A model generated the notes under the pieces. It saw only the letters and a program-made list of their open reading frames with translations, made no database searches and was not told where the DNA came from. This document shows, piece after piece, positions 2 to 39,656 of a DNA stretch of 64,000 bases (position 1 is the first letter of the stretch; every line of letters starts with the position of its first letter). The position numbers and the translations under genes are program-made. Origin of the DNA: Macrostomum lignano (taxonomy: Eukaryota). The stretch covers positions 62,001 to 126,000 of the forward strand of contig NIVC01003772.1 of NCBI GenBank assembly GCA_002269645.1, given 5' to 3'.

Positions 2-673
2 ACTGGAGCTGACTGTGTTCGCCCTGAGTTCACTAAGATTGTGTGGGGCACGTGTGATCCGATGTCCTGTAGTTACCTGTGTAACAAGACTCCCAAATGC
101 CAGGCCTTCACGCTGCCCTCTGGCGACTGTGTCTGCAAGCTGTTCCTGTTCGACAAATGCAGTCACCGAGTACAGTCAGTGCCTAACTGTGCTCACCTGG
201 TGACCATGTACGTGAGATCAATGGCCGGAGTAGCGGCGGGTCGCTTGTGTCCTCCTGGATACGAGTTCGCTCAATACGGCACGGCCTACAAGGTGTCGGT
301 CTCGACCGCGGCCAACTGGGCCGACGCCAATGAGAAATGCGGCGAGGAGGCCGGCCTGTCGAAGTTCGCGGACGCTCTGGACACCGAAGAGTCTCGCCAC
401 CTCATGTGGATCAAGAACGTGTCGAACGTTCCGATTGAGAGCTTGTTCCTGGGAGGCTACCAGATGCCAGGTTTGGGTAGCATGACTGAAGGCTGGATCT
501 GGGGCGCGTGCAACGAGAGCATCCAAGCCGACGTGTGGGAGCCGGGCAGACCGAACTTTGGCTTGCCCAGACAAGGATGCGCCAACGCTGGTAGCAATCA
601 AATGATCGGAATTGATGACGGCGACTGCAGTCATGTATTAAAATACATCTGCGAGTGTCAACTTGTGTTCTAA
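2..673 (+). CDS. C-type lectin domain protein with N-terminal PAN/apple-like Cys-rich module (5'-partial)
   Basis: The frame is open from position 2 (TGADCVRPEFTKIVWGTCD...) to TAA at 671-673. CTLD pattern W-A-C...FLGG...W-W...W-PG-PN...C...DD-C-L-YICE, preceded by CSYLC-x5-C-AF...C-C-L (PAN/apple-like). AATAAA at 674-679. Confidence 0.8.
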   Translation, partial: TGADCVRPEFTKIVWGTCDPMSCSYLCNKTPKCQAFTLPSGDCVCKLFLFDKCSHRVQSVPNCAHLVTMYVRSMAGVAAGRLCPPGYEFAQYGTAYKVSVSTAANWADANEKCGEEAGLSKFADALDTEESRHLMWIKNVSNVPIESLFLGGYQMPGLGSMTEGWIWGACNESIQADVWEPGRPNFGLPRQGCANAGSNQMIGIDDGDCSHVLKYICECQLVF

Positions 674-1057: not shown

Positions 1058-1372
1058 TCTATATGTAGCTATTGGGGGTGCTTGCTATTGTATTCGGGTA
1101 CGTGATGCTTGCTATCTTGGGGATGCTTTCTATTTAGGGGGAATGCCTGTTTTCTGTGAAGGCTATATTTCGTTGTTGTCTTTTTGTTACTTTTAGAATA
1201 AATAGATTCATTGCAAACATCTTTGTCCGTGACAATTTTACTTGAATAAGGTGATTTATAAAACCGAAGAAATTGATTCTTAAGAAAATGTGCTTTTTGA
1301 TGGATTTGCATTAATAATTTAATTTTGCTCTTTGCTTTTTGGGCGCCCCGAATGGGGGCACTACATTGCTAG
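1058..1372 (+). mobile_element. Non-autonomous mini-Helitron (~315 bp)
   Basis: A|TC 5' end at 1057/1058, GC-rich hairpin GCCCCGAATGGGGGC, then ...TTGCTAG|T 3' end at 1372/1373, with no TSD. The interior resembles 8965-9200 (inverted) and contains decayed copies of the 18-bp ATAGCAAGCATCCCCCAG unit. Confidence 0.7.
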
Positions 1373-1511: not shown

Positions 1512-1555
1512 CCTTTGAAGGCGTCTCTTGCTGCAAAGACTCAGTTTATTACATG
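1512..1555 (+). ncRNA. Spliced-leader (SL)-like sequence: diverged SL RNA copy/pseudogene or retroposed leader
   Basis: CCTTTGAAGGCGTCTCTTGCTGCAAAGACTCAGTTTATTACATG is 44 nt and ends in ATG like flatworm SLs. It matches 29/33 over the 3' part of the Macrostomum lignano SL as recalled from the literature (needs verification). It is followed by CTAAG rather than a GT donor. Confidence 0.55.
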
Positions 1556-2514
1556 CTAAGCTAAAAGTTCTTTTTCGACATAGCATTGCATCCTAGTTTC
1601 AAGTACTTGAAAATTTAGAAATTTATTTTCATTTAGTACCGGAAATTCGTCGAAAACCTCGTCTTACTTCGTCGAACTATGAATAAAACAAACGAAGCGA
1701 CGCGTTCTGTTATTTTGTGAATATCTGGCAACTATTACGAAAGTATATAGAATAGGAACCTTTTATTTATTTAATTTTTTTAAATCCTCCTGTGCAAAAA
1801 ACATCAGTTTTAAATCCAAGAGACAGTTGTGCAGTCTTCACAGTTACATTTGACATTTAATTTCGATTGAATTTTAGCAAGGCTTGTGCTGCTAAAAGCC
1901 ATACAAAATAAGCACAAAAAGGAGAAGACAAATTATAATTTTTAAAGAAAAAACAGGTTACAAGTGACAACTGACAATTTAACAAGTAGTGACAACTTGA
2001 AAAGTGACAATAAGTACGCTCGTAGAAATCTGCTGAATTTTGTGAATTAGCAATCAATTATTTCTGCTTTCTCAAGAATCAATATAAAGACTCTGTTCGC
2101 AAGAGCAGAAGCCACTTATAGAGTTTTTTAAATGACAAGAAGAAGTACACTTGCTGATGAACGAGCTACATTTGTTTTGTCTATAACCCCAAGACAAACA
2201 AGAAACGCTTGAAAAATTCTCATATGTCACTTGGACTCCTGAATATCTTGGCTTCAAGTATCTTCAATTCAGGGTCAGTCCTAACAATTAGAGTGAGATA
2301 GATTTTTCAAAATATCACCATCCATAAAACTAAATCAAGCTCCATTATTTAAAACTTACTTCGACAATGGTGCATTGTCCATATTTATGTCCGTCTAATT
2401 GAAGATACTTAGACACTTATCTATTTGTTTTAAATTGAATAACAAGCAGAACGACAGTTTGAGAAAAGCGTGGAACAAAATAACAAATTGTAAAGTAATT
2501 AAAGACACTGCCGG

Positions 2515-7728
<5,214 letters not shown>

Positions 7729-7929: not shown

Positions 7930-8226
7930 CATACATGCGCAACCTCCAAAATTCGGTCGGCCATGCGACTTAGTTTTAACAAAAATGCGACATAGTTTTT
8001 GGCCAAAAATGTGACTTACATGTAAAAAACCCTAAAGCAAAATTAACGCAACTTTGGGTAAACGGCAGGAGTAACTATGACTGTTTTATTAGGTCAAAAT
8101 GCCTCGTCAGCTACTTAGTACTACTACTTTAGTATCTATTTGGGTGGGCATTTTTGCGACCTCCTTGGTTGGCCGTCAAATCGGTCGGCCGGATCGGCCG
8201 ACTCGGCCGACTGTTGCGCATGTATG
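7930..8226. mobile_element. MITE (297 bp), 14-bp TIR, 8-bp TSD (hAT- or P-superfamily type)
   Basis: TIR CATACATGCGCAAC (7930-7943) / GTTGCGCATGTATG (8213-8226). TSD TGCTAGAT at 7922-7929 and 8227-8234. Subterminal GGTCGGCC motifs. Confidence 0.85.
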
Positions 8227-9111
8227 TGCTAGATATAAAAAAAATGTTTTAGCCAGTCATAATGGCTGAACAAAAACAGCCTATAGTAAATTGTTCTGTA
8301 TACCAACAAATTAGAAAGGTATATATATTAAATTTCCAGTAAAACTTAGTACAAAAAAAGACTTATTATAAATTAATAACGTTGCCTTAAGTTTATAAAT
8401 TGAGACTTTAAACCACATGTTAAAATTAGCTGCCAGTTTTTACGATGCTATACGTAAATTCAAGTAAAATAAGTTCATGCTACAAATTGAGAACTCAAGG
8501 ACTTCTAGACTAACAGGACGTAAAATTCAAAGATCGTGCAATTTTTTGGAGGCCACGATTTCCTGGAAAAAATACACTGCGAAGATAGGAAAAAATCTGC
8601 TTTTTGTCACAAAATCTGTGATTGTATTTGATCTGGGGCAGTGAAGACTACCATTCTTTTAATTTAACATGCACAACATGTTACTCTATTATATTTTCAT
8701 ATAGCTGTGTAGTGAAGTTTTCATTTTCATATTGTTTTCACTTTATTTCATAAGCCCAAAGTTGCAAACTCACAAGTGGCATTAGCCAAATATAAAATTC
8801 AAGAAAAGAAAAGCTATTCAAATTTGTAATATAATAATATTTTTAGCCTTTAAAATAAAAATGACAAAAGGACTAATCAATTTTTTTTCTTATAGATACC
8901 TAGTAAAAATGGTTAGGGCCTATTTTTGTGATTAAGTCTATTCTTCTTAAATCTTAGTCTTAAACTAGCAATCTTCGCCCCCCGATGGGGGACATCTGGA
9001 TAGAATCTCTGTTCTCTACAAGTAACAAAAAGACAGCCAGAAAATCCTTCACAAAGACAACAGACAAACTGCTCAAATGAAGTGAATTGCAATAAGAAAT
9101 CTTCCCAAGAC

Positions 9112-9575: not shown

Positions 9576-9674
9576 GACAAAAAGTAGCTAGAGCGACAAT
9601 TTCCTTAGCTTTATAGTGGCTCCTTTAAATTGGCATGGCGCTTTATACCTTTACATTTGAAATTGTATATCTTG

Positions 9675-11740
9675 AATGTTTGACATGGTGGCTCTTTTAT
9701 GTTTGACATGGTGGCTCTTTATTGTTCGACATGGTGGCTTTTTTATGTTTGACATGGTGGCTCTTGTATGTTCGACATGGTGGCTCTTTTAATGGTCGAC
9801 ATGGTGGCTCTTTAATGTTCTTCATGTTGGCTCTTTTATGTTTGACATGCTGGCTTTTTTATGTTTGACATGGTGGCTCTTTTATGTTCGACATGGTGGC
9901 TCTTTTATGTTCTACATGGCTGCTCTTTTATGTTCGACATGGTGGCTCTTGTATGTTCGACATGGTCGCTCTTTTGGGTTTGAAATGGTGGCTCTTTAAT
10001 ATTTGACAAGGTGGCCCTTTAATGTTTAACATGGTGGCTCTTTAAATTTCGAAATGGTGGCTCCTTAATTTTCGAAATGGTGGCTGTTTTATGTTTGACA
10101 TGGTGGCTCTTTAATGTTCGACATGGTGGCTCTTTAATGTTCTTAATGGTGTCTGTTTTATGTTTGACATGGTGGCTCTTTATTGTTCGACATGGTGGCT
10201 CTTTAATTTTCGAAATGGTGGCTGTTTTATGTTTGACATGGTGGCTCTTTAATATTTGACAAGGTGGCCCTTTAATGTTTAACATGGTGGCTCTTTAATT
10301 TTCGAAATGGTGGCTCCTTAATTTTCGAAATGGTGGCTCTTTTATGTTTGACATGGTGGCTCTTTAATGTTTGACATGGTGGCTCTTTAATGTTCGACAT
10401 GGTGGCTCTTTAATGTTCTTAATGGTGTCTGTTTTATGTTCGACATGGTGGCTCTTTTATGTTCGACATGGTGGCTCTTTAATGTTCGACATGGTGGCTC
10501 ATTTAGGTTTGAAATGGTGGCTCTTTAATGTTTGACATTGTGGCTCTTTAATATTTGACAAGGTGGCTCTTTAATGTTCGACATGGTGGCTTCTTAATTT
10601 TCGAAATGGTGGCTCCTTAATTTTCGAAATGGTGGCTGCTTTATGTTTGACATGGTGGCTCTTTAATGTTTGACATGGTAACTCTTTTATGTTTGATATG
10701 GTGGCTCTTTTATGTTCGACATGGTGGCTCTTTAATGTTCGACATGGTGGCTCCTTTAGGTTTGAAATGGTGGCTCTTTAATGTTTGACATTGTGGCTCT
10801 TTTATGTTCGACATGGTGGCTCTTTTAGGTTTGACATGGTGACTCTTAAATGTTTGACATGGTGGCTCTTTAATGTTTCACATGGTGGCTCTTTAATATT
10901 TGACATAAAGTCACATATATGTTTGACATGGTGGCTCCTAAATGTTTGACATGGTGGCTCTTTAATGTTCGACATGGTGGCTCCTTAATTTTCGAAATGG
11001 TGGCTCCTTAATTTTCGAAATGGTGGCTGCTTTATGTTTGACATGGTGGCTCTTTAATGTTTGACATGGTAACTCTTTTATGTTTGATATGGTGGCTCTT
11101 TTATGTTCGACATGGTGGCTCTTTAATGTTCGACATGGTGGCTCCTTTAGGTTTGAAATGGTGGCTCTTTAATGTTTGACATTGTGGCTCTTTTATGTTC
11201 GACATGGTGGCTCTTTTAGGTTTGACATGGTGACTCTTAAATGTTTGACATGGTGGCTCTTTAATGTTTCACATGGTGGCTCTTTAATATTTGACATAAA
11301 GTCACATATATGTTTGACATGGTGGCTTCTAAATGTTTGACATGGTGGCTCTTTATGTTTGACATGGTGGCTCTTTTATGTTCGACATGGTGGATCTTTT
11401 TTGTTCTACATGGTAACTCTTTTATGTTTGATACGGTGGCTTTTGAATGTCTGACATGTTGGCTCTTTTATGTTTGACATGGTGGCTCTTAATTGTTTGA
11501 CATAGTGGCTCTTTAATGTTCAAAATGGTGGCTCTTTAATGTTCGAAATGGTGGCTCTTTAATGTTCGAAATGGTGGCTGTTTTATGTTTGACATGGTGG
11601 CTCTTTTATGTTTGACATGGTGGCTCTTTAATGTTCGACATGGTAGCTCTTTAATGTTCGACATGGTAGCTCTTTTATGTTTGACATGGTAACTCTTTTA
11701 TGTTCGATATGTTGGCTCTTCTATGTTTGACATTGCGCTT
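9675..11740. repeat. 23-bp minisatellite (AATGTTYGACATGGTGGCTCTTT), ~90 copies, inside the Helitron
   Basis: 23-bp period, with an internal 391-bp (17-unit) higher-order duplication. Confidence 0.95.
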
Positions 11741-14313
11741 CTTTGATGTTTAGCAGTTTTGTTGTGTTTTTAAGGTGTTTTAATAAAAAAATCTTTTTGC
11801 ACTACTATGATTCGAACCCAGGTCGCTACATTAGCATTCCAGTCTGTTCGCATCAGGGCTATCTCTTTTCAATTGGAGAACATGAATTGTGGCCCTTATA
11901 ATTCAATTCTTACAGCAAGTCAATTGGAGTAAAAAGTTATGACATAATCAATTTCTCAGTCAGCCAGTATCAGTCTCAATTTAAGTTAGCAATATGGTTA
12001 CGCAATTTAAATCAAGTCGTGTGTGCATTTCTTCGGTACTGTTTTCAACTTGTTGTGATGCAATCTTTATCACAATCGGAATTCAGTCAGTCAGTTTTTT
12101 CTCTAGCATTCTTACAATGCATTTCAGGTCGAAAGAGCTGCTTGACCTTTGCAAAAAAGCATGTTTTTCGAATATTTAATCCCTTTAAAATTGAGCAATT
12201 TCTTAGCCAAGATGCATGTACCGTCCCAGGAAAATTTCTGATCGAATAATGCAAGTTTGAAGAAAATCGGTTGAGCCATTTTTTCTGAAATCTATCGCAT
12301 ACCTACCTACCTACCTACCCACAGACAACTCATTTTTAGTATATAGGATATAGGCTTGGCTTAAAAACTGATAATACAGCTTTCTCAAGCCTAGGTAACC
12401 AACCATATGAAACTATGTATTGGTAATCTATATATAATAAAAAAATCATTGTCTAAATTTAATTACTTATTAGGCTAGATAGTGTACTGTAGTGATAGGT
12501 CTAGTTCTAGTAGGCCTAGGAATTAGTATAGTTACTAAACCTACAATAATAGCTTAAGACTAAGAGTACCTACATGCAATGTTTTTATACTTTATTTTAA
12601 AAAGAACAACACAAAAAGTTTGGCTAGGCCTAATGCCACTTGTAAGTTTGCAACTTTGGGCTTATGAAATAAAGTGAAAACAATATGAAAATGAAAACTT
12701 CACTACACAGCTATATAAAAATATAATAGAGTAACATGTTGTGCATGTTAAATTAAAAGAATGCTAGTCTTCACTGCCCCAGATCAAATACAATCACAGA
12801 TTTTGTGATGAAAAACAGATTTTTTCCTATCTTCGCAGTGTATTTTTTCCAGGAAATCGTGGCCTCCAAAAAATTGCACGATCTTTGAGTTTTACGTCCT
12901 GTTAGTCTAGAAGTCCTTGTGAGAACTATACGACTTTATAACTTTAAAGCTTAAAGTATTACTGGTCCAAAAGTAGCATTGCTACAAAAGTAAATGTAAT
13001 TGCATCAAAAATGTTCTAACAGATGACAAATTAAAAAGAAAAGAATGCTACCTTCAAAATATTTAAAAGTTAGTAAAAAGATAAGAATTATAAGTATTTT
13101 GACAAAATAAAGAGTCAAATCAAAAGTTTTTGCTTGTTAGTATGTACAAAATATATTTAGATATACGCTTTGTTTAAATATGAACTTTTTTCTAAAACTT
13201 GAAGTGCCTTTTTTTCGAAACACGCATCGCAACGACCGGTGATCAAAATTGGTGAATCGTTCTTTCGATGGTCACAAATTTTATAAAATAATGCGATAGT
13301 TAAATCCACACATGAAAATTGTTTCGTTTAGATTTTGGGAAGAATTTATTAAAATGTTAGAAGACCTGGAAAGTGGAAAGCATAGGGCCTAGTAGTTTGA
13401 AGCATTGAAGAATTGAATGAGATTTTATTTTTTGGCATAGGGCCTACACTTACTCAATTACTGTGACTTATTTTTTCCATACAAATAAATAGCCATCTGG
13501 AAAATCACTCTGAAAAAAGATTAAGAGCTAAGAAAGCTTGTTTTAATGTAATTTAATTCTCTTATTTTATAATTTCCAACAACTTTTTGTTCAAGCTTAT
13601 GATAGGCCTAGCCTAGCTCATGCACATATGCTTTGTCTACTGGTCTACAGACTCTCAGTACAGGTACTAAGAATTATGGCCTACTGAACAGTGCAGATTG
13701 AGATATTGAGATATTAGGTATATTATATAATAGGCCTACTAAGTCCTAAAACTGTGATCTAACTGTTCTATTAGTTAGCCATAATGCCCATAAGCCATAA
13801 GGTTTGACTAGGCGTAAAAAGTATTTTTTTTTCATTTGAATATTGGGTGCTAGTGAATCTAGTAGCCAGTTAAATGTAGAATCTGTAGCAGAATTGGAAT
13901 GGAATAGGCCTAGCAGGGTAAAATGTATAAATTTGTAGGGCCTAATAGAATGGTAAATTGCAAAATCAATTGTAGATTGTTGAATGTAATCTAGGCCTAA
14001 TCTCTAATGGGAGACAAGGAAATGCTTTAAACCTTGGTGGTGCTTCAACATGCCTTTTATTTTTATTGTTTATATGAATGCAAAGTATATTTTAGTTAAT
14101 AACATTTGTAATTGCAAAGGTTGCTTATTCACTAAAAAGGTAATCAACCAATGCACATTTCAGCTATTCTCTGTGTTTAGCATTACTTGCATCAATAAAC
14201 AAAATGACTAAAGTCCTTACTAGACTGCTGTAGTGTAAATCCATATGCCAATGCAGGTAGTATATTTAGTTTCATAATTGCATGATAACAGAATCTCAAT
14301 AATCAGTGCAAAG

Positions 14314-24700: not shown

Positions 24701-27700
24701 GGCCAGCGGTCTGATACCGCCCAGCATCATCAGCATCGCCTGATCTACATCAGCGCCTCGTCGCTTCAGCGCATCGCCGCTTCACCGTCTGCCTGACTGC
24801 AGCCTACAGCCGCCCTCGGTCACTCCGCCTCTCTCTCTCTCTGTGCAGCTGCCGGTAAGTTCCTGTTACTAATTTGTGCTCTAATTACCTTTGCTTATCC
24901 GGGGTTTGCCTATTTTCCATTATCTGATTAGAGAGCTGAGCCAATTGTGATACCGTAACTTATTGCTGTATTTTACTCAACAGTGAAGCCGCCTAATTGC
25001 CTGATTATTCGCCTAAGGGCCTAATTATTAACTATTAACTAACCCCATCATTATTCACTCTTTCACCATCATTTCACTCATGGCTTGCTAAGCCTTTCTC
25101 CCGGGGTGGCGAAGCATAAGGAAGTTGGGTAAGCTAATGGCCTCTCCCCGTGCAAAGCCCGCCTGTGAGTGCGTGCTGCGGGGCCGCGTGTGCGTGCAGT
25201 AGAGGGATTAGCGAGTCTTGGCACAGAATGGCAGTAGGAAGGTTGCAACCCCATGCTGACGCGTCCCTTCGCCCTGAGCAATCTAAACTATAGACAGTAC
25301 ATGTTCGTCTCATACTACTCTTAGTAATCAAAGTCGCAAGTTAGCCTCGCTCACAGCCACAAAGGATCCCCTGCTGAGAAATCCTCCAGATTGAGCCCAG
25401 AGTTCCCGATCATGCCCCAAGCAGAGTCCCTGTTCTCGGCTGCATGTGTCTCCCCTGTTAGCCTAAATCTCCTGGTAACCAATCCAGGCGGGGCTCTAGC
25501 CTCGAGAGGTCTGGTAGAAAGATCCAGGTGCGCCAGGTCACATAGAGTGGTGGCAGCCACTCGGTCATACGATGACCGAATGACCAACTATTGCACCTTG
25601 GCTACATGAGGGGTCCATGTGGGTCCTTGGCCCTCTGGTCACAAAGCGCTACCAAAGCTATCAATCATGTGGGCGGGACAGTCTGGTGCTGGAGGTCCGT
25701 CAGGCCATTGCCCGGTCATAGGCAGCCTACGGTCATTGCCCCCTCTAGTCATGCGTTCGTCTCTCTACGGAGTGGACAGGCGACAAGGGCGGTTACAACA
25801 ATAACGGAATTGGATGTGTTGGAAAGATATTGAAGTGTTAGGAAGCACAGACAGTAAGGGTGTCAGAATGACACAGTGGGGTGTCAGAATGACACAGTGG
25901 GGTGTCAGAAGGACACAGTGGGGTGTCAGAATGACACAGTGGGGTGTCAGAATGACACAGTGGGGTGTCAGAAGGACACAGTGGGGTGTCAGAATGACAC
26001 AGTGGGGTGTCAGAAGGACACAGTGGGGTGTCAGAATGACACAGTGGGGTGTCAGAATGACACAGTGGGGTGTCAGAAGGACACAGTGGGGTGTCAGAAG
26101 GACACAGTGGGGTGTCAGAATGACACAGTGGGGTGTCAGAAGGACACAGTGGGGTGTCAGAATGACACAGTGGGGTGGACACAGTGGGGTGTCAGAAGGA
26201 CGCAGTGGGGTGTCAGAATGACAGAATTGGTTGTCAGAATGACACAGTGGGGTGTCAGAATGACACAGTGGGGTGTCAGAATGACACAGTGGGGTGTCAG
26301 AATGACACAGTGGGGTGTCAGAATGACACAGTGGGGTGTCAGAATGACACAGTGGGGTGTCAGAATGACACAGTGGGGTGTCAGAATGACACAGTGGGGT
26401 GTCAGAATGACACAGTGGGGTGTCAGAAGGACACAGTGGGTGTCAGAAGGACACAGTGGGGTGTCAGAATGACACAGTGGGGTGTCAGAATGACGGGGTG
26501 TCAGAATGACACAGTGGGGTGTCAGAAGGACACTGGGGACTGGGGTGTCAGAATGACACAGTGGGGTGGACACAGTGGGGTGTCAGAATGACACGGTGGG
26601 GTGTCAGAAGGACACAGTGGGGTGTCAGAAGGACACTGGGGACTGGGGTGTCAGAATGACACAGTGGGGTGGACACAGTGGGGTGTCAGAAGGACGCAGT
26701 GGGGTGTCAGAATGACACAGTGGGGTGTCAGAATGACACAGTGGGGTGTCAGAAGGACACAGTGGGGTGTCAGAATGACACAGTGGGGTGTCAGAATGAC
26801 ACAGTGGGGTGTCAGAATGACACAGTGGGGTGTCAGAAGGACGCAGTTGGGTGTCAGAATGACAGAATTGGTTGTCAGAATGACACAGTGGGGTGTCAGA
26901 ATGACACAGTGGGGTGTCAGAATGACACAGTGGGGTGTCAGAAGGACACAGTGGGGTGTCAGAATGACACAGTGGGATGTCAGAATGACACAGTGGGGTG
27001 TCAGAATGACACAGTGGGGTGTCAGAATCACACAGTGGGGTGTCAGAAGGACACAGTGGGGTGTCAGAAGGACACAGTGGGGTGTCAGAATGACACAGTG
27101 GGGTGTCAGAATGACACAGTGGGGTGTCAGAAGGACACAGTGGGGTGTCAGAATGACACAGTGGGGTGTCAGAAGGACACAGGGGTGTCAGAATGACACA
27201 GTGGGGTGTCAGAAGGACACAGTGGGGTGTCAGAAGGACACAGTGGGGTGTCAGAATGACACAGTGGGGTGTCAGAATGACACAGTGGGGTGTCAGAATG
27301 ACACAGTGGGGTGTCAGAATGACACAGTGGGGTGTCAGAATGACACAGTGGGGTGTCAGAAGGACACAGTGGGGTGTCAGAATGACACAGTGGGGTGTCA
27401 GAATGACACAGTGGGGTGTCAGAATGACACAGTGGGGTGTCAGAATGACACAGTGGGGTGTCAGAATGACACAGTGGGGTGTCAGAATGACACAGTGGGG
27501 TGTCAGAATGACACAGTGGGGTGTCAGAATGACACAGTGGGGTGTCAGAATGACACAGTGGGGTGTCAGAATGACACAGTGGGGTGTCAGAAGGACACAG
27601 TGGGGTGTCAGAATGACACAGTGGGGTGTCAGAATGACACAGTGGGGTGTCAGAATGACACAGTGGGGTGTCAGAAGGACACAGTGGGGTGTCAGAAGGA

Positions 27701-30700
27701 CACTGGGGACTGGGGTGTCAGAATGACACAGTGGGGTGGACACAGTGGGGTGTCAGAAGGACGCAGTGGGGTGTCAGAATGACACAGTGGGGTGTCAGAA
27801 TGACACAGTGGGGTGTCAGAATGACACAGTGGGGTGGACACAGTGGGGTGTCAGAATGACACAGTGGGGTGTCAGAATGACACAGTGGGGTGTCAGAATG
27901 ACACAGTGGGGTGTCAGAATGACACAGTGGGGTGTCAGAATGACACAGTGGGGTGTCAGAATGACACAGTGGGGTGTCAGAATGACACAGTGGGGTGTCA
28001 GAATGACACAGTGGGATGTCAGAATGACACAGTGGGGTGTCAAATGGACACAGTGGGGTGTCAGAATCACACAGTGGGGTGTCAGAAGGACACAGTGGGG
28101 TGTCAGAATGAAGGAGTCTGCGGAATGGGCAGAATTGCCGTCAGCGCCCTGGGTTGTGGGACGATGTCGCTTTGTTAACACAGGCACCTGTGAATTGTGT
28201 TGCTAAAGTTTAGAAATCATATATTTTTCTAACTAAAAGCGTTTCACTTCCCTAAATACTTTTAGGTTCCTAAACTGCGAGCACTGTGCCTTGAATTCTC
28301 GACAGAACAAAGTCCTAATCCTGGAATTATAGCATTTTGTTCTATGCTGGCTGGTTTCTTGTTCGATCGCGGATTAGCTAACGAAATTACAGACAAGGTG
28401 AGACTGTTCTGTATACAGGGGGCATTGTATTCTATCACACCAGTGATTTTGGTCTCTATCCCACCGGTGTATTGGTCTCTATCCCACCGGTGTATTGGTT
28501 TCTATCCCACTGGTATATTGGTCTCTATCCCACCGGTGTATTGGTCTCTATCCCACCGGTGTATTGGTCTCTATCCCACCGGTATATTGGTATTTATCCC
28601 ACCGGTGTATTGGTCTCTATCCCACCGGTGTATTGGTCTTTATCCCACTGGTGTATTGGTCTCTAATCCCACCGGTTACTTATTCCCATTTAATTTAATG
28701 CAAGTTCAACGATGCACCTATGCATCAAGATTACTGTTATTTAGTAAATAAATACAGTAATATTGTACATTACAATCCTTACTATTGCAGTCGGTTCTGC
28801 TAAAGCACTATCTGCAGACCTGTTTTGTTACCAAGGAGGCGGCCAGCCAATTGCAGTTGGACAGCAGCAAACGAATGGTCCAATTACTGGTTGATAGGAA
28901 ACTGTTTTCTGATGAAGTCCTACCGCTCATTAAAAAAGCCGTGCTGCGTTCTCCAGAGGTAACGGGATTGTGTTTGAAGGCTTAAGATAGGGCTTAGACC
29001 TTAGTGTTGTGTTGGATATCTTTGTGTTATATCTGTGTCATGTATTGTCAACATTAGTAATGAGATTTCATTAGGATAATTAATGGGATTCTATTGGGAT
29101 TTCATTGAAAAAATTATCTGGATTTCGTTGGGATAGTTATTGGGATTTCATTGAAAAAATTATCTGGATTTCGTTGGGATAGTTATTGGGATTTCATTGA
29201 AAAAATTATCTGGATTTCGTTGGGATAGTTATTGGGATTTCATTGGGAAAAGTAATTATTGGGATATCATTGGGATAATTATTGGGAAAAGTAATTATTG
29301 GTATTTTATTGGGATAATTGTTGGGATTTCATTGGGATAATTGTTGGGATTTCATTGGGATAATTATTGGGATTTCATTGGGATAAATATTGGGATTTCA
29401 TTGGGATAATTATTGGGATTTCATTGGGATAAATATTGGGATTTCATTGGGATAATTATTGGGATTTCATTGGGATAAATATTGGGATTTCATTGGGATA
29501 AATATTGGGATTTCATTGGGATAAATATTGGGATTTCATTGGGATAATTATTGGGATTTCATTGGGATAAATATTGGGATTTCATTGGGATAATTATTGG
29601 GATTTCATTGGGATAAATATTGGGATTTCATTGGGATAATTACTGGGATTTCATTTGGATAATTAGTGGGATTTCATTGGGATAATTATTGGGATTTCAT
29701 TGGGATAATTATTGGGATTTCATTGGGATAATTATTGGGATTTCATTGGGTTAGTTATTCGGATTTCATTGGGATAATTATTAGGATTTCATTGGGATAG
29801 CTAGTGCAGATGCTCTCCATCAGCCCAAGCCCCATCGCCCAATCCCAGGTTGCCCTACCAACCGTGTCCAGCTGCCTGAGCAGTCTCAGCGTCGATCTCA
29901 GCCAGTACAGCGGCGACCTGCTCGACACGCTGAGCGGCCATCTGCGCGCCGAATCCGACGCTCTGAGGTCGGGCAGCGTTGACTGCGTCGGCTGCTTAGC
30001 CAAGCAAGTAACGACGGTCAAGCATTCGTCGAAGGTTTAACTCGCAGATTGTGCGGCCTGTTGCTAGGCAACGAGGCAAAGCTAACTAATCCCAAACATA
30101 AGCTGAGTCTGTTAGCGGCCTGTTCTCAACTGCCGGGTGCGGCGCCCACTGACTCTGCTAGGCGGAGCTGCTCAGCTATGCTGGGCAAAGCTTTGGTCAG
30201 CTTTCTGGGACAGGAGGGTGAGTGCTGTCCCGTCTTGTTGGTGCTTTGGTCTCTAACTGAGGATATCGTATCATTGGCGCCTCTCTGACATTTGATTAAT
30301 TGATTGGCGCCTTGCTGACACTTGATTGATTGATTGGCGCTTTCTGACACTTGACTAATTAATTGGCGCCTCTCTGACATTTAATTGATTGATTGGCGCC
30401 TTTCTGACACTTGATTGATTGGTTGGCGCCTCTCTGACATTTGATTGATTGATTGGCGCCGTTCTGACACTTGATTGATTGATTGGCGCCTTGCTAACAC
30501 TTGATTGATTTATTGGCGCCTTTCTGACACTTGATTGATTGATTGGCGCTGTTCTGACACATGATTGATTGATTGGCGCCGTTCTGACACTTGATTGATT
30601 GATTGGCGCCTTGCTGACACTTGGTTGATTAATTGGCGCCTTTCTGACACTTGATTGATTGATTGGCGCCTTTCTGACACTTGATTGATTGATTGGCGCT

Positions 30701-33700
30701 GTTCTGACACTTGATTGATTGATTGGCGCCTTGCTGACACTTGGTTGATTAATTGGCGCCTTCTGACACTTGATTGATTGGTTGGCGCCTTCTGACACTT
30801 GACTAATTAATTGGCGCCGTTCTGACACTTGATTGATTGACTGACTGATTGGCGCCTTTCTGACACTTGATTGATTGATTGGCGCCTTTCTGAAATTTGA
30901 TGGATTGATTGGCGCCTTTCTGACACTTGATTGATTGGTTGGCGCCTTCTGACACTTGATTGATTGGTTGGCGCCGTTCTGACACTTGATTGATTGATTG
31001 GCGCCTTTCTGACACTTGATTGATTGACTGACTGATTGGCGCCTTTCTGACACTTGATGGATTGATTGGCGCCGTTCTGACACTTGATTGATTGATTGGC
31101 GCCTTTCTGACACTTGATTAATTGACTGACTGATTGGCGCCTTTCTGACACTTGATTGATTGATTGGCGCCTTTCTGACACTTGATTAATTGACTGACTG
31201 ATTGGCGCCTTTCTGACACTTGATTGATTGATTGGCGCCGTTCTGACACTTGATTGATTGATTGGCGCCTTGCTGACACTTGGTTGATTAATTGGCGCCT
31301 TCTGACACTTGATTGATTGGTTGGCGCCTTCTGACACTTGACTAATTAATTGGCGCCGTTCTGACACTTGATTGATTGACTGACTGATTGGCGCCTTTCT
31401 GACACTTGATTGATTGATTGGCGCCTTTCTGAAATTTGATGGATTGATTGGCGCCTTTCTGACACTTGATTGATTGGTTGGCGCCTTCTGACACTTGATT
31501 GATTGGTTGGCGCCGTTCTGACACTTGATTGATTGATTGGCGCCTTTCTGACACTTGATTGATTGACTGACTGATTGGCGCCTTTCTGACACTTGATGGA
31601 TTGATTGGCGCCGTTCTGACACTTGATTGATTGATTGGCGCCTTTCTGACACTTGATTAATTGACTGACTGATTGGCGCCTTTCTGACACTTGATTGATT
31701 GATTGGCGCCTTTCTGACACTTGATTAATTGACTGACTGATTGGCGCCTTTCTGACACTTGATTGATTGATTGGCGCCGTTCTGACACTTGATTGATTGA
31801 TTGGCGCCGTTCTGAAATTTGATTGATTGATTGGCGCCTTTCTGACACTTTATTGATTGATTGGCGCTTTTCTGACACTTGATTGATTGATTGGCGCCTT
31901 TCTGACACTTGATTGATTGATTGGCGCCGTTCTGACACTTGATTGATTGATTGGCGCCGTTCTGACACTTGATTGATTGATTGGCGCCTTTCTGAAATTT
32001 GATTGATTGATTGGCGCCTTTCTGACACTTTTTTGATTGATTGGCGCTTTTCTGACACTTGATTGATTGATTGGCGCCGTTCTGAAATTTGATCGATTGA
32101 TTGGCGCCTTTCTGACACTTTATTGATTGATTGGCGCTTTTCTGACACTTGATTGATTGATTGGCGCCTTTCTGACACTTGATTGATTGATTGGCGCCGT
32201 TCTGACACTTGATTGATTGATTGACGCCTTTCTGAAATTTGATTGATTGATTGGCGCCTTTCTGACACTTTATTGATTGATTGGCGCTTTTCTGACACTT
32301 GATTGATTGATTGGCGCCTTTCTGACACTTGACTGGTTAATTGGCGCCTTTAATGGGCGCCACCCTGAGGGACCCTGATGTCCCTGTTTGACCTTAACTA
32401 CCCCATAACCCATAGTATCGGCGCTACTGCCTTAGTCAATCACAAACAATTACAAATTTCAGTTCAAGAAGCCATCACCATTGAAGCGCTGTGCCAGTTG
32501 CGACTGTGCTTACAGAAAATTGACGCCAAAGACTTGCCAATCATTGTGACGGCACTGCAGGCAAGTTACAAGTATTTTTATATAGAAATGTTGGTCTCAG
32601 AATTCTATTTTGACTATTAATTTGTGCCGCCGAAAAGCCATTCACTCCGCTGGCTGAAGCTTTAATTAGTCACTTCGCTGTAAGTGCTAGATAATTACAG
32701 GTGGATTATTAGCCTATGTAATTAGATATTTAGTTGATTTCACAAAAATCTTACCTAATTTGATAATTAGTAATTAGGCAGTCAGCTTAGCTAATTAGGT
32801 AATTACACAAACAGCTTAGGTAATCAGATAATTATAGAAACAGCTTAGGTGGTTAGATGGTAAGACATACAGCTTAGGTAATCAGATAATTATAGAAACA
32901 GCTTAGGTAATTAGATAATTAGACATACAGCTTAGGTAATTAGATAATTAGACCTACAGCTTAGATAATTAGACCTACAGCTTAGATAATTAGACCTACA
33001 GCTTAGATAATTAGACATACAGCTTAGGTAATTAGATAATTAGACATACAGCTTAGGTAATTAGATAATTAGACATACAGCTTAGATAATTAGACCTACA
33101 GCTTAGATAATTAGACCTACAGCTTAGATAATTAGACCTACAGCTTAGATAATTACACATACAGCTTAGGTAGTTAGGTAATTAGACATACAGCTTAGGT
33201 AGTTAGGTAATTAGACATACAGCTTAGGTAGTTAGGTAATTAGACAAGCAGTTTATTTAATTTGGTAATTAGTAATCAGCTTAGGTAATTATATTATTTT
33301 CAAATCTGATAATGATGAATTGTTGTACTTTAATGATTATTAAACAGGACGGCTTAGCCAAGAAGCAGACCCAGCAACAGAGACTGCACTATCTGTGGTG
33401 CCTCCGATCCGCATTCGTCGATCATCCGGTATCCGGCCTTTTATCCAACTTGTCGGCGCTGAAGGACGCTTTGACTCGGGTCTCCGCTGTCGGCAAGCCG
33501 CCGGCTGCCGCGCTTCTGCTTCAAGCTGCCGCGCCTCTGCTTGAAGCTCTGGCCCCGTGCGAGCTGACCCTGCGATTGCACTCGGAGGGCGCCGCGCCGA
33601 CCGATCTGTTCGATGCCGCTATGGCCGCCTGCGGCAAGCCGCACCAGCCGCCGTTGCTAAGCGACACGCTGGCCAGGGCGATTCGATTGGGCGGTGCAGC

Positions 33701-35345: not shown

Positions 35346-38300
35346 GCCCAGCCGTATCCCTATTCACATTCATACCTCCTCAGGGACTCACCGGCCTATC
35401 GTTTGCGCGCTCACTGCTGCTGGCCTGCAACCAGCTGCTAGTCGCCAACGCCCAGTCCGTTGCCAAAGCCTCGCCTTCCACTACCGACGCTGTTGCCGAC
35501 GCTGGCCCCGCGGCGTCGGCATCGGCGGCAGACATGGGCGACGCCTTGTCGAGAGACGCAACCGACGCCTCGCCAGATACGGCAATCGCCCTGCACGACC
35601 TGATGACCGCCTTTGCCGATGTCGGCCGCGTTGGAGACTCGGCTGGGCCTGGCGATGCGAACTCGGAACTGCCGGCGCTCCTGCTGCTGCCCTGCCATCA
35701 CGCCTCCGTGCGGACGCCGGACCTCTGGCGCCGGCTGCTGTTGAAGTTGTTCGCCGATACTGGCGCGAATGACGTTAATGCATCTGGCGCATGGCAACGG
35801 GTTAGTAACGGGGGGGGGTGGTAATTATCTAGTGTCCATGCTTGTTATCTCCGTAAAATCCCAATAATTTTCCTCATGAATCCCTAATAATTATCCTAAC
35901 GAAGTCCCAGAAGTTATCCCAAAAAATATTCCAATAAAATCCCAACAGTAATCCCCATAAGATCTCAATAATTATCGCCATGAACTCCCAAATCCCAATT
36001 ATCACTCCCTTAAAATCCCAACAATTATCATAATGAAATCCCAATAATTATCCGAATGAAATCCCAATAATTATCATAATGAAATCCCAATAATTATCCG
36101 AATGAAATCCCAATAATTATCCGAATGAAATCCCAATAATTATCCGAATGAAATCCCAATAATTATCATAATGAAATCCCAATAATTATCCGAATGAAAT
36201 CCCAATAATTATGCGAATTAAATCCCAATAATTATCCGAATAAAATCCCAATAATTATCCGAATGAAATCCCAATAATTATGCGAATTAAATCCCAATAA
36301 TTATCCGAATTAAATCCCAATAATTATCCGAATGAAATCCCAATAATTATGCGAATTAAATCCCAATAATTATCCGAATTAAATCCCAATAATTATCCGA
36401 ATTAAATCCCAATAATTATCCGAATGAAATCCCAATAATTATCCGAATGAAATCCCAATAATTATCCCCATTAAGTTCTAATCCAAGTTAATCCCAGTAA
36501 TTATCCCCATGGAATCCCAGTACCTTTTTGTCTTTATTATCCCTAGTAGCCTGCTCTTAACGAAGCTAGATGCATCTGCCGCATGGCAACGGGATAGTAA
36601 CTGGTAGTTGAAACCTACCTCATAATGGCAGATGCCGTTAGACTTACCGGCCCTACTAAACCGCTGTTTCGATCCGCTGCTATCAGCACCTGCGTCACCT
36701 GCCAGTTCGCCTCAACCGCATCACAGGCGGGCAATAGTCACGCTAACAATGGAGTGTCCGGGATTTGCCAACTTGCTAGCCAGCCGCATCCTAGACTGTT
36801 TAACCTCTCCGGAAGTGTTTGAAGTCACCGAACTAGAAGCTGGCATCCTGCGCACGCCAGACAATCGGGTATTCGATCTGGCCGCTCTGGATGAGTCTGC
36901 CAATAGGATTCGAGAAGAACTGGAATCCAGCCTGCTAGGCGGTGACAGCAAGGCTGGGTCCAATGTTAAACGGGAGAACCGGCTTTACAGCTACGCTGAT
37001 CAGATGGCCGAATTGGAGCTTCGCCGGGAGTTGGCCAGCAAGAAAGGCGACAAAGAGTTGCAGAAACGCTTGGCCGCGGCTATGGCTGAACAGTTATCGG
37101 CTGAGAAAGCTGTTCGAGACCGGCTGTGCGGACTTGATCGACGTGTTGACGCAGCGTTTCAGCTGCTGCTTGGCCTCATCGAAGCTATCGGTTAGGTTTG
37201 CTTCTTTGTAGCTTGCCTAGATCTTGTAGAGACTGGCGTCTAGATGTCTCTTAGAGATTGGCACCTAGATATATGAGAGATTGGCGCCTTAATATCTTAG
37301 AGATTGGCGCCTAGATAGCTTAGAGGTTGGTGCCTAGATATATTAAAGATTGGCGCTTAGATATCTTAGTTATTGGCGCCTAGATATTTTAGAGATTGGC
37401 GCCTTAATATCTTAGAGATTGGCGCTTAGATATCTTAGAGATTGGCGCCTAGATGTGATAGAGATTAATGCCTAGATCTTAGAGATTGGTGCCTAGATAT
37501 CTTAGAGATTGGCGCCTAGATATCTTAGAGATTGGCGCCTTAATATCTTAGAGATTGGCGCTTAGATATCTTAGAGATTGGCGCCTAGGTGTGATAGAGA
37601 TTGATGCCTAGATCTTAGAGATTGTCGCCTAGATATCTTAGGGATTGGTGCCTAGATATCTTAGAGATTGGCGCCTAGATATCTTAGAGATTGGTGCCTA
37701 GATATCTTAGAGATTGGCGCCTTGGTCTAGTAAATATTGGCTCATAGATCTTGAAGATTAGCGCCCTAGATTTGAATGAAAATTAATGGCGCCTAGATCT
37801 AAGAGATTGGCGCTCAGATCTGTGAGACACTACATATAGGGCTTAGATTGATAAATAAGTGCCTAATAGATTTGATACGAAAGCACCTAGATGTAAAAAT
37901 TGAATGCCCAGATCTTAGAGATAAGCGACTGAATATATAGATATAAAAAACCGTATGTCTAATTTAGTTTGTATTACCCCAATGTAAAAAATCTATTATT
38001 AATAAAGAATCAGTGCACCCTTGACCCCTCTCTCTACCACACTGTACACAGGTCGCACTCTAACGCAGGGCAACTCCGCAGACGAGTCGCTTTTACTTCG
38101 CCACCGCCTCGCTGACTGTCTCTCTTCTCTACTCGCTTATCCGTTAACTGCTCGTCGCGCTATAATCGCTTTCGAAGCCTTAGCAACCGTTGCTAAGGCC
38201 TCAAATTCGAATGGTTTGATCTACGCTCGAGCCCTGTTTAGTCTGTGCTCGCCAGCTGTAGGCAGAATCGGGGCCGGTTGCACCATAGACTGGATGAGCA

Positions 38301-39656
38301 ACAACGGGGGCGCTTCGAGTTTAGTAGATTCGGCTTTATACCGACTAGCCAATGCCGACAGCATCGGCGAGAATGATAGTCGGCAGCCTCTGTTGGACAG
38401 TCGAACTGAAGGCGATTTCGCCGTCGCTTTGCCGTTGCTTCGCTGCGTTCTGCTGCACTCGGACGGCCGGGACTGCCAGCCGAAACGGTGCGATCTGGCT
38501 CTGACGGCTAGCGAACGGTATTGCAGACTGGTTGGCGAGCCGCAACGATTGCCGTTGAACAGCTTCTTGCCTATGCTTGCCGGGCACCTGCCTGCGGCAA
38601 GGCCAGCTCTGCTGTTGCTGTGCGAGCGGTGCGGCGATCGGCTGACGCCAGAGTGCCTGCGTGCGCTGATGAGGTTTGCGTTCTTATATGTACGAGTAGA
38701 TAGGGGAGTTTGTGATTTAATGAGGGGTTGTAGCCTAATGAGGGGTTGTAGCCTAATGAGGGGTTGTAGCCTAATGAGGGGTTGTAGCCTAATGAGGGGT
38801 TGTAGTCTAATGAGGGGTTGTAGTCTAATGAGGGGTTGTAGCCTAATGAGGGGTTGTAGCCTAATGAGGGGTTGTAGTCTAATGAGGGGTTGTAGCCTAA
38901 TGAGGGGTTGTAGCCTAATGAGGGGTTGTAGTCTAATGAGGGGTTGTAGCCTAATGAGGGGCTGTAGCCTAATGAGGGGTTGTAGTCTAATGAGGGGCTG
39001 TAGCCTAATGAGGGGTTGTAGCCTAATGAGGGGGTGTAGTCTAATGAGGGGTTGTAGCCTAATGAGGGGTTGTAGTCTAATGAGGGGTTGTAGCCTAATG
39101 AGAGGTTGTAGCCTAATGAGGGGTTGTAGTCTAATGAGGGGTTGTAGCCTAATGAGGGGTTGTAGTCTAATGAGGGGTTGTAGCCTAATGAGAGGTTGTA
39201 GCCTAATGAGAGGTTGTAGCCTAATGAGAGGTTGTAGCCTAATGAGGGGTTGTAGTCTAATGAGGGGTTGTAGTCTAATGAGGGGTTGTAGTCTAATGAG
39301 GGGTTGTAGTCTAATGAGGGGTTGTAGCCTAATAAGGGGTTGTAGCCTAATAAGGGGTTGTAGCCTAATGAGGGGTTGTAGCCTAATGAGGGGTTGTAGC
39401 CTAATGAGGGGTTGTAGCTTAATGAAGGTTTGTAGCCTTATGAAGGTTTGTAGCCTTATGAAGGGTTGTAGCCTTATGAAGGTTTGTAGCCTTATGAAGG
39501 TTTGTAGCCTTATGAAGGGTTGTAGCCTTATGAAGGGTTGTAGCCTTATGAAGGGTTGTAGCCTAATGGTTAGAGCGCGTCAGACTTACGACTGAAAGGT
39601 CGGGGGTTCGATTCTCATTAGGCTAGATTAGTTATTTAAATGAAATTTTACCTTTC

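What the first reader, a model, noticed from the sequence alone, without database searches (positions are those of the whole stretch)
1512..1612. Diverged spliced-leader-like sequence with a compensated 5' hairpin
Seen: a 44-mer ending in ATG with a 5' mini-hairpin CCTT-TG-AAGG, followed by CTAAG, a U-rich AGTTCTTTTT word and a perfect palindrome TTTCAAGTACTTGAAA (1597-1612). Known (recalled, must be verified): flatworm SLs end in AUG, and the M. lignano SL is CCGTAAAGACGGTCTCTTACTGCGAAGACTCAATTTATTGCATG with a CCGT/ACGG hairpin. The 3' 33 nt match at 29 positions, all four differences being transitions, and the hairpin is kept by apparent compensatory change. Inference: either a second/variant SL RNA gene or SL pseudogene (donor GT to CT), or a retroposed trans-spliced mRNA 5' end (relict SL). 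A variant SL class would be a new component of the trans-splicing system.
Basis: partly seen in the sequence, partly recalled or inferred. Interest (0 to 1): 0.8.

Follow-up and report, generated by a model that had tools for sequence, protein, structure and literature searches.

The report
Dead spliced-leader fragment in flatworm DNA
A 33-base stretch really is a mutated copy of the Macrostomum flatworm spliced leader, but it is an isolated, decayed fragment that lacks what a working spliced-leader RNA gene needs, so it is a genomic fossil and not a new part of the trans-splicing machinery.

Summary
The sequence is there as described. Window 1523-1555 matches the published Macrostomum spliced leader (SL) at 29 of 33 positions, and all four differences are transitions. 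About 1e-8 such matches are expected by chance in the window.

The rest of the reading does not hold. I recovered two genuine Macrostomum-type SL RNA genes from public contigs (L005, L007). They fit the published description of the M. lignano gene: about 109 bp, GTAAG donor, Sm-like site between hairpins. Against them, similarity in the window is confined to leader nt 12-44 plus CTAAG. The 5' 11 nt, the other 59 intron nt and the flanks are at chance level.

- A covariance model scores the genuine genes 125-129 bits and this locus 15.4 bits (local, exon only). Leaders on trans-spliced mRNAs score about the same.
- The donor is CT.
- The "compensated" 5' hairpin is out of register and worth -0.4 kcal/mol.
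- The U-rich word and the palindrome belong to a separate 85-nt inverted repeat.

The locus is single-copy in the window, non-coding, and upstream of the IFT81 3' end. The window is M. lignano or a close relative.

Best reading: a dead SL RNA gene or transcript fragment. A retro-copied mRNA leader is the main rival. A functional variant SL is unlikely (about 3%).

The parts
1523..1555 (+). SL-derived core: a copy of leader nt 12-44 (GTCTCTTGCTGCAAAGACTCAGTTTATTACATG), ending in the leader's ATG.
   Evidence: 29/33 identical to the published leader, with 4 transitions. About 1e-8 expected by chance. It is the only copy in the window at <=3 mismatches. The covariance model matches it locally, model positions 17-50, at 15.4 bits.
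1556..1560 (+). CTAAG at the position of the genuine donor GTAAG. A dead donor if homologous; otherwise a coincidence.
   Evidence: 4/5 in register with L005 and L007. Chance probability of >=4/5 is about 0.016. C at +1 cannot act as a 5' splice site (established knowledge).
1512..1522 (+). Most likely unrelated flanking DNA.
   Evidence: 4/12 identity in register. The hairpin is 3 bp, -0.4 kcal/mol and out of register. A gapped alternative that aligns CTTTG with the genuine 5' flank is possible but not significant.
1572..1656 (.). An 85-nt imperfect inverted repeat (base TTTTCGAC...GTCGAAAA). It is a separate foldback element of unknown nature.
   Evidence: Folding 1568-1660 gives -19.1 kcal/mol, z = -3.45 on the + strand and -18.7 kcal/mol, z = -2.36 on the - strand. 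No Rfam match.
41..673 (+). Context: an upstream + strand ORF (210 aa, cysteine-rich) that ends at 673 with AATAAA at the stop.
   Evidence: No Pfam family was assigned, so whether it is an exon is inferred.
2507..7272 (-). Context: the IFT81 gene on the opposite strand. Its 3' end (stop near 2507) points towards the SL-like fragment.
   Evidence: IFT81_CH domain at 6754-7272, E = 7e-16. The coiled-coil exons and the C-terminal exon at about 2507-2722 were read (inferred).

Best explanation
The locus is a solitary, non-functional fragment about 38 bp long, derived from a Macrostomum SL RNA gene or its unspliced transcript. It covers leader nt 12-44 and the first five intron nucleotides.

My inference is that it was pasted into intergenic DNA, for example as a duplication remnant or as filler in a repair event, and has since drifted. 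It has four transitions in the leader and G->C at the donor, so 5 changes in 38 nt, about 13%.

It has no donor, no Sm site, no stem I base and no recognisable promoter. It therefore cannot donate a leader and does nothing in trans-splicing.

Shown: the homology, its sharp boundaries, and the absence of the other SL RNA gene parts. Inferred: the route by which the fragment arrived.
For: - The homology is real: 29/33 to the published leader.
- Two genuine genes were recovered, L005 615-723 and L007 1589-1696. Each has the leader, GTAAG, stem-loop II, AUUUUUAG and stem-loop III. They fold at -33.4 and -33.5 kcal/mol with z = -3.3 and -4.1, and are 91% identical to each other from -5 to +111.
- Against L005 in register the window gives: 5' flank 10/30, leader nt 1-12 4/12, nt 13-45 29/33, intron +1..+5 4/5, intron +6..+64 15/59. 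The boundaries are sharp.
- Alignment of the downstream 100 nt to the genuine introns scores no better than shuffles.
- Covariance model R1 scores genuine genes 125-129 bits and this locus 15.4 bits, local only. No full-length gene is present anywhere in the window.
- Window 1512-1625 folds no better than shuffles (z = +0.16).
- The in-register CTAAG (p about 0.016) favours a gene or unspliced-RNA source over a spliced mRNA.
- There is no ORF of 40 aa or more on the + strand nearby or downstream, no poly(A) and no target-site duplication.
- SL-RNA loci that lack the donor have already been read as pseudogenes in parasitic flatworms (PMC12582326).
Against: - The 3' limit of homology falls within 5 nt of the exon end. 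That is what a spliced-leader copy would give, and needs some luck (about 0.08) for a random gene fragment.
- The model score and extent are the same as for leaders on real trans-spliced mRNAs (19.8-21 bits).
- C is the first base after the leader in 3 of 5 real trans-spliced mRNAs.
- The M. lignano SL RNA intron sequence itself was not available. The comparison relies on two environmental Macrostomum-type genes that fit the published description.
- A perfect 6-bp, 4-nt-loop hairpin followed directly by AUUUAG (1597-1618) has the same geometry as stem-loop II plus the Sm-like site. It is rare: the only case in the window, at an expected 0.006-0.015 per kb. This hints that more of the gene architecture may be present than sequence comparison shows.
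Confidence: 0.5

Rival explanations
1. It is a relict leader from a trans-spliced RNA. The 5' end of a mature, SL-capped transcript was reverse-transcribed, truncated 5' at leader nt 12, and integrated. The sequence after ATG is the body of that RNA. It is dead and drifting.
For: - Homology stops at the exon end.
- The model hit is indistinguishable from leaders on real mRNAs: 15.4 bits against 19.8-21 bits, same model span.
- The next base is C, as in 3 of 5 real mRNAs.
- 5' truncation is typical of retro-copies (established knowledge).
- In M. lignano a genomic SL sequence at the 5' end of the protein-coding gene Mlig013257.g1 has been reported (PMC8629364).
- Relict SLs are documented in dinoflagellates.
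Against: - There is no ORF remnant on the + strand downstream (longest 30 aa in 1556-2400), no poly(A) tract and no target-site duplication.
- It requires CTAAG matching GTAAG at 4/5 by chance (p about 0.016).
- No parent gene could be sought.
Confidence: 0.25
2. It is the remnant of an old, once-functional paralogous SL RNA gene, a second SL class. Its leader was conserved while its intron diverged but kept the hairpin-plus-Sm architecture. This copy is now dead because its donor changed from G to C.
For: - The leader is 88% conserved while the intron is unalignable. That is the pattern seen between SL classes in other animals (recalled knowledge of nematode and planarian SL1/SL2).
- A 6-bp, 4-nt-loop hairpin directly followed by AUUUAG mirrors genuine stem-loop II plus AUUUUUAG. 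This composite occurs once in the 128 kb of window strands.
- CTAAG sits in register.
- CTTTG lies upstream, as in both genuine genes.
Against: - The hairpin is part of a larger 85-nt inverted repeat that folds on both strands, so it reads better as an unrelated foldback.
- The donor-to-hairpin spacing is 41 nt, against 12-13 nt in the genuine genes.
- The 5' CCGU...ACGG element, the part best conserved among flatworm leaders (recalled), is destroyed, and the base of stem I is lost.
- The motif definition was relaxed after the fact: 3 U instead of 5.
- Only one SL has been reported in three Macrostomum species.
Confidence: 0.12
3. It is a currently functional variant SL RNA gene that donates a variant leader.
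For: The leader-like sequence ends in ATG. There are a U-rich word and a hairpin downstream.
Against: - CT stands at the donor, and the nearest GTs (1544, 1567) lie in poor contexts.
- The fold is not better than shuffles.
- The model hit is local only.
- It is single-copy in the window.
- All 7 public leader-bearing contigs carry the canonical bases at the three variable positions that the search pattern left open.
- No paper in the library lists the variant.
Confidence: 0.03
4. It is a chance resemblance.
For: The match is short (33 nt) and occurs once.
Against: Per-site probability is about 7e-14, so about 1e-8 are expected in the window and about 1e-4 in a 1-Gb genome. The match also ends exactly at the leader's ATG.
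Confidence: 0.005

Closest known systems
Macrostomum SL RNA gene (109 bp, about 8 copies in the deduplicated M. lignano genome; PMC8629364). Represented here by L005 615-723 and L007 1589-1696.
   Same: Leader nt 12-44 at 88% identity, ending in ATG. The next five bases are CTAAG against GTAAG.
   Different: No GT donor. The 5' CCGU-AAAG-ACGG element is absent. Stem-loop II, the AUUUUUAG site and stem-loop III are unalignable. 15.4 bits against 125-129 bits on the covariance model. No stable three-stem fold.
SL-RNA pseudogenes of parasitic flatworms (Unique_SL-18, -20 and -37, which lack the donor; PMC12582326)
   Same: An SL-like leader without a conserved splice donor, interpreted as non-functional.
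   Different: Those loci were found as full-length SL RNA-like sequences. Here only about 38 nt survive. This one is in a free-living macrostomid.
Relict spliced leaders of dinoflagellate genes (for example PMC3229502, PMC5585692)
   Same: A 5'-truncated, mutated leader copy encoded in the genome.
   Different: Dinoflagellate relicts sit in the 5' UTRs of expressed retro-genes, often in series. Here no gene body, poly(A) or second relict follows.
Genomic SL at the 5' end of M. lignano gene Mlig013257.g1 (earlier mistaken for the SL RNA; PMC8629364)
   Same: An SL sequence in the Macrostomum genome outside a bona fide SL RNA gene.
   Different: That copy heads a protein-coding gene.

Membership tests
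Flatworm SL RNA gene | Leader ending in AUG | tested here: met
   The match ends ...TTACATG at 1555.
Flatworm SL RNA gene | Canonical GU 5' splice donor immediately after the leader | tested here: not met
   CTAAG at 1556-1560, against GTAAG in L005, L007 and the published gene.
Flatworm SL RNA gene | Donor held in stem I by pairing with the leader, within an overall stable multi-stem fold | tested here: not met
   The window folds at -18.3 kcal/mol with z = +0.16. The genuine genes fold at -33.4 and -33.5 kcal/mol with z = -3.3 and -4.1. The stem I base (CGGU/ACCG) is lost, and there are C.C and C.A mismatches.
Flatworm SL RNA gene | Sm-like site flanked by hairpins | tested here: inconclusive
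   A hairpin at 1597-1612 followed by AUUUAG has the geometry of the genuine genes and is rare. But it lies 41 nt from the donor and is part of a larger inverted repeat. AGUUCUUUUUCG only loosely resembles the S. mansoni motif AGUUUUCUUUGG.
Flatworm SL RNA gene | Full-length similarity to genuine genes of the genus | tested here: not met
   Covariance model R1 gives 15.4 bits, local, positions 17-50, against 125-129 bits. Intron identity is 15/59. Alignment is no better than shuffles.
Flatworm SL RNA gene | Multiple or tandem copies, or linkage to other snRNA genes | tested here: not met
   One copy in 64 kb. No Rfam snRNA in the window. The genuine gene in L007 sits about 300 bp from a U1 gene. 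Whole-genome copy number could not be tested.
Flatworm SL RNA gene | The leader is found spliced onto diverse mRNAs | not testable with these tools
   No read data for the species. The five public leader-bearing transcript contigs, from another Macrostomum-like species, all carry the canonical leader.
Relict SL / processed retro-copy of a trans-spliced mRNA | A leader copy ending exactly at the leader's 3' end, usually 5'-truncated | tested here: met
   Homology runs from leader nt 12 to 44. Whether +1..+5 belongs to it is ambiguous.
Relict SL / processed retro-copy of a trans-spliced mRNA | Followed by an mRNA body (ORF or its remnants), a poly(A) tail and target-site duplications | tested here: not met
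   The longest + strand ORF in 1556-2400 is 30 aa. There is no A-tract and no flanking direct repeats.

The most novel reading that the evidence does not exclude
The fragment is the visible trace of a second, diverged SL RNA class in Macrostomum, with the leader variant GUCUCUUGCUGCAAAGACUCAGUUUAUUACAUG. Intact members elsewhere in the genome would be used at a low level or in particular cells. They would have been missed because the published analyses searched for or assembled the dominant leader.
Probability: 0.05. Interest if true: 0.6.

Novelty: new member of a known kind. Interest (0 to 1): 0.2.

Why it matters
As it stands the finding matters little. It shows that pieces of the spliced leader or of its gene get scattered into Macrostomum intergenic DNA and decay there. 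That is a small data point on the turnover of SL RNA genes, or on reverse transcription of leader-bearing RNAs, in free-living flatworms. SL-RNA pseudogenes have so far been described only in parasitic species.

There is a practical consequence. Leader-based searches of Macrostomum genomes will hit such relics, so candidate genes should be required to have GT, an Sm-like site and the fold. One locus was already mis-assigned as the SL RNA in the first M. lignano genome paper, according to PMC8629364.

It would matter more only if variant-leader transcripts exist.

Tried and rejected
- **Rfam.** No family matched at gathering thresholds over the whole window, and nothing relevant at E <= 10 over 1300-1800. 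Rfam also fails to detect the genuine Macrostomum SL RNA genes, so it is uninformative here.
- **Literature search for the variant.** Only the canonical leader is printed anywhere in the library. Text searches for the M. lignano SL RNA intron found nothing. The first genome paper is not held.
- **Species identification through proteins.** The GCN1 and SNRK exons gave no near-identical hits and no M. lignano hits, even though M. lignano proteins are in the database. This is unexplained. Species assignment rests on repeats shared with M. lignano genomic loci.
- **Promoter comparison** of the window upstream region with L005, L007 and the U1 gene. There are too few sequences, and only T-run similarity appeared.
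- **Search for a transposon context.** A 16-nt inverted repeat pair (1272-1287 and 2068-2083, 94%) brackets the locus. There are no target-site duplications and no further copies in 96 kb of M. lignano DNA.
- **Gapped alignment of the 5' end.** CTTTG-(5-nt gap)-AAGGCG would extend homology into the genuine 5' flank, but it scores no better than the ungapped alignment.
- **Weak full-length model hits** at window 32267 and 8172 and at L008 18324. The first lies in a minisatellite. I read the second as lying in a transposon terminal repeat. The third shows nothing SL-like in the sequence.
- **Reconstructing the full IFT81 protein** to fetch homeologous copies of this intergenic region. Judged too error-prone for an exact-match look-up, so not attempted.

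Full report
**The observation.** Window 1512-1555 reads CCTTTGAAGGCGTCTCTTGCTGCAAAGACTCAGTTTATTACATG. It is followed by CTAAG, then AGTTCTTTTTCG, then the perfect palindrome TTTCAAGTACTTGAAA at 1597-1612. PMC8629364 gives the M. lignano 35-mer CGGTCTCTTACTGCGAAGACTCAATTTATTGCATG. Table S3 of PMC10468722 gives the 45-mer GCCGTAAAGACGGTCTCTTACTGCGAAGACTCAATTTATTGCATG for M. cliftonense, and the same sequence less two bases for M. hystrix. In ungapped register the last 33 nt match at 29 positions, and the four differences are all A<->G. The probability of 29 or more matches in 33 at one site is about 7e-14. That gives about 1e-8 expected in the window and about 1e-4 in a 1-Gb genome. The resemblance is homology, not chance. 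There is one copy in the window, and no canonical leader at <=3 mismatches.

**The organism.** Real exons in the window encode SNRK, GCN1, a 5'-nucleotidase and IFT81. The best SNRK hits are flatworms. The window is packed with more than 40 different minisatellite arrays. Genomic DNA of M. lignano (GCA_002269645.1; loci L008-L012) has the same texture. It shares three things with the window: the 28-bp minisatellite family (85-87% over 1.5 kb), a tRNA-derived SINE (79-91%) and a 58-bp repeat piece at 98%. The window is therefore M. lignano or a very close relative. The expected functional leader is then the canonical one, which is identical in three Macrostomum species and in every public contig found below. 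One oddity remains. No M. lignano protein appeared among the SNRK and GCN1 hits, although M. lignano proteins are in the database.

**Genuine genes for comparison.** I scanned public collections with CTGCNAAGACTCANTTTATTNCATG, which leaves three of the four variant positions free. This returned seven contigs, all with the canonical bases. Five are transcript-like contigs with the leader at the 5' end followed by different 5' UTRs and ORFs. One of these encodes a GAPDH 87% identical to an M. lignano GAPDH. Two are genomic SL RNA genes:
- L005 615-723, from a JGI metagenome.
- L007 1589-1696, a eukaryotic contig mis-binned in a Flavobacteriaceae MAG, about 300 bp from a U1 snRNA gene.

Both read leader | GTAAGACACCG(G/T) | stem-loop II (GATCCA-AUxx-UGGAUC) | UAUUUUUAGC | stem-loop III (AGCCC-loop-GGGCU). 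This fits the published description of the 109-bp M. lignano gene. They fold into three stems at -33.4 and -33.5 kcal/mol, with z = -3.3 and -4.1. The donor GUAAG is paired to CUUAC of the leader. The two contigs are alignable only from -5 to +111 of the gene, at 91%. The gene, intron part included, is therefore strongly conserved.

**What the window locus shares with them.** In register with L005, identity is as follows:

| Segment | Identity |
|---|---|
| 5' flank | 10/30 |
| leader nt 1-12 | 4/12 |
| leader nt 13-45 | 29/33 |
| intron +1..+5 | 4/5 |
| intron +6..+64 | 15/59 |

- Local and semi-global alignments of the 100 nt after the ATG to either genuine intron score no better than shuffled sequence.
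- A covariance model built from the two genes scores them 125-129 bits. It scores the window locus 15.4 bits as a local hit to model positions 17-50 only. It finds no full-length SL RNA gene anywhere in the window.
- The leaders on the five real trans-spliced mRNAs score 19.8-21 bits over similar model spans. To the model, the locus looks like a leader without its gene.
- Window 1512-1625 folds at -18.3 kcal/mol, no better than shuffles (z = +0.16).

**The 5' hairpin.** The canonical CCGU-AAAG-ACGG forms 4 bp at -2.8 kcal/mol. The window's CCUU-UG-AAGG would need a 2-nt loop. The predicted fold is 3 bp at -0.4 kcal/mol, reached by 17 of 200 shuffles. It is 2 nt out of register with the canonical hairpin, so there is no compensatory change column by column. 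In the full-length genuine RNA the ACGG strand is in any case predicted to pair with the intron, forming the base of stem I. That pairing is lost here.

**The downstream 'Sm word' and palindrome.** A perfect 6-bp stem with a 4-nt loop, followed at once by AUUUAG, mimics the geometry of genuine stem-loop II plus AUUUUUAG. This composite is rare. It occurs only at this site in the 128 kb of window strands, and 0.006-0.015 per kb are expected. This is the best argument that more than the leader survives. Three points weaken it:
- The hairpin begins 41 nt after the donor instead of 12-13 nt.
- The motif had to be relaxed to three U.
- Both the U-rich word and the palindrome turn out to be arms of one imperfect inverted repeat, 1572-1656 (TTTTCGAC...GTCGAAAA). 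It folds on either strand: -19.1 kcal/mol, z = -3.45 on +, and -18.7 kcal/mol, z = -2.36 on -.

I read that as a separate foldback element next to the fragment.

**Context.** The locus lies in non-coding DNA. Upstream is a + strand ORF ending at 673. Downstream is the 3' end of IFT81 on the - strand, with its stop near 2507 and its N-terminal CH-domain exon at 6754-7272. On the + strand there is no ORF longer than 39 aa overlapping 1400-2400, and none longer than 30 aa between 1556 and 2400. There is no poly(A) tract and there are no flanking direct repeats. The flanks have no other copy in the window or in 96 kb of M. lignano DNA. That sample also has no leader-like fragment longer than 11 nt, so such relics are not dense.

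**Interpretation.** A recent whole-gene pseudogene is excluded. With 12% divergence in the leader, the intron would still align. Three histories remain.
- (a) An approximately 38-bp fragment of an SL RNA gene or unspliced SL RNA. It explains the sharp boundaries and the in-register CTAAG (p about 0.016 by chance). It needs the 3' boundary to fall near the exon end (about 0.08).
- (b) A 5'-truncated copy of the leader from a spliced mRNA. It explains the boundary at the exon end and the C that follows, which 3 of 5 real mRNAs share. It needs the CTAAG coincidence and leaves the lack of any ORF, poly(A) or duplication unexplained.
- (c) An old paralogous SL RNA gene whose intron diverged but kept its architecture. 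It fits the hairpin-AUUUAG composite. It conflicts with the destroyed 5' element, the lost base of stem I, the altered spacing and the larger inverted repeat.

I put these at about 0.5, 0.25 and 0.12, and a currently functional variant gene at 0.03. In every case but the last the locus is inert.

**Comparison with what is known.** SL-RNA loci lacking the donor, with negligible transcript support, have been called pseudogenes in Schistosoma and Fasciola (PMC12582326). Relict leaders are known in dinoflagellate retro-genes. A genomic leader at the head of an M. lignano protein-coding gene was once mistaken for the SL RNA. The present fragment is one more member of this class of SL debris, in a free-living macrostomid. 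Only one SL is reported for Macrostomum, and nothing here changes that.

**Limits.** I had no read data and no whole genome for the species. The M. lignano SL RNA intron was not available as text, so two environmental Macrostomum-type genes stand in for it. The p-values for the flank coincidences are partly post hoc.

Noticed in passing
window 1572-1656: An 85-nt imperfect inverted repeat (TTTTCGAC...GTCGAAAA, with the 16-nt perfect palindrome near its centre). It folds well on both strands (z = -3.45 and -2.36). No Rfam match. It could be a foldback or MITE remnant, a miRNA-like hairpin, or a terminator-like element in the non-coding gap upstream of the IFT81 3' end.
   Followed up: partly
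whole window, e.g. 9670-11751, 25858-28111, 30273-32351, 54642-56126, 60038-61237: More than 40 different minisatellite arrays (units of about 18-32 bp, tens of copies each), many apparently inside introns. The same texture, and one shared 28-bp family, occur in M. lignano loci L008-L012. Tandem and simple repeats make up 15% of that genome according to PMC5730564.
   Followed up: partly
window 38021-39595, 44771-46171, 26601-27782, 30807-31652: Some Pfam hits on long mechanical ORFs (Hexapep/LbH_EIF2B, UBact/AraC_binding, ice-binding beta roll, extensin) fall inside minisatellite arrays. One example is the 18-bp unit at 38718-39568, which reads as a hexapeptide repeat. These are translation artefacts, not genes.
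   Followed up: partly
L007 (JAGQZA010000190.1) 1121-1283 and 1589-1696: A contig filed under a Flavobacteriaceae MAG carries a U1 snRNA gene (151.7 bits) and a Macrostomum-type SL RNA gene about 300 bp apart. It is eukaryotic (flatworm) contamination of the bin. It also shows SL RNA-U1 linkage.
   Followed up: partly
L001-L004, L006 (Ga0316592) and L005 (Ga0302322_100095745): JGI environmental data contain trans-spliced mRNAs and an SL RNA gene of uncultured Macrostomum-like worms. The leader is 100% identical to that of the three published species; the GAPDH is 87% identical to an M. lignano GAPDH. L005 has a partial duplication of the gene's 5' end (CGCCGTAAACTCTTT) just upstream of the gene.
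   Followed up: partly
window 7930-7987 and 8172-8230: An inverted pair (CATACATGCGCAAC... / ...GTTGCGCATGTATG) upstream of IFT81. The left arm is 98% identical to the edge of M. lignano locus L009, so it is probably the terminal repeats of a transposon. It produced a spurious weak SL RNA model hit at 8172-8268 (12.3 bits, E = 0.25).
   Followed up: partly
window 46342-46501 and 39551-39614: tRNA-derived SINE-like copies (…GGTTAGAGCGCGTCAGACTTACGACTGAAAGGTCGGGGGTTCGATTC…), shared with M. lignano loci L008 and L009 at 79-91%.
   Followed up: no
window 1272-1287 and 2068-2083: A 16-nt inverted repeat (ATTGATTCTTAAGAAA / TTTCTCAAGAATCAAT, 94%) brackets the SL-like fragment at 780 nt spacing. No target-site duplication was seen. 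It may be chance or old transposon ends.
   Followed up: partly
protein searches: The SNRK and GCN1 exons of the window returned no M. lignano protein, although M. lignano proteins are in the database and the DNA repeats say the window is M. lignano-like. The genes may be unannotated or the entries masked. This is unexplained.
   Followed up: no
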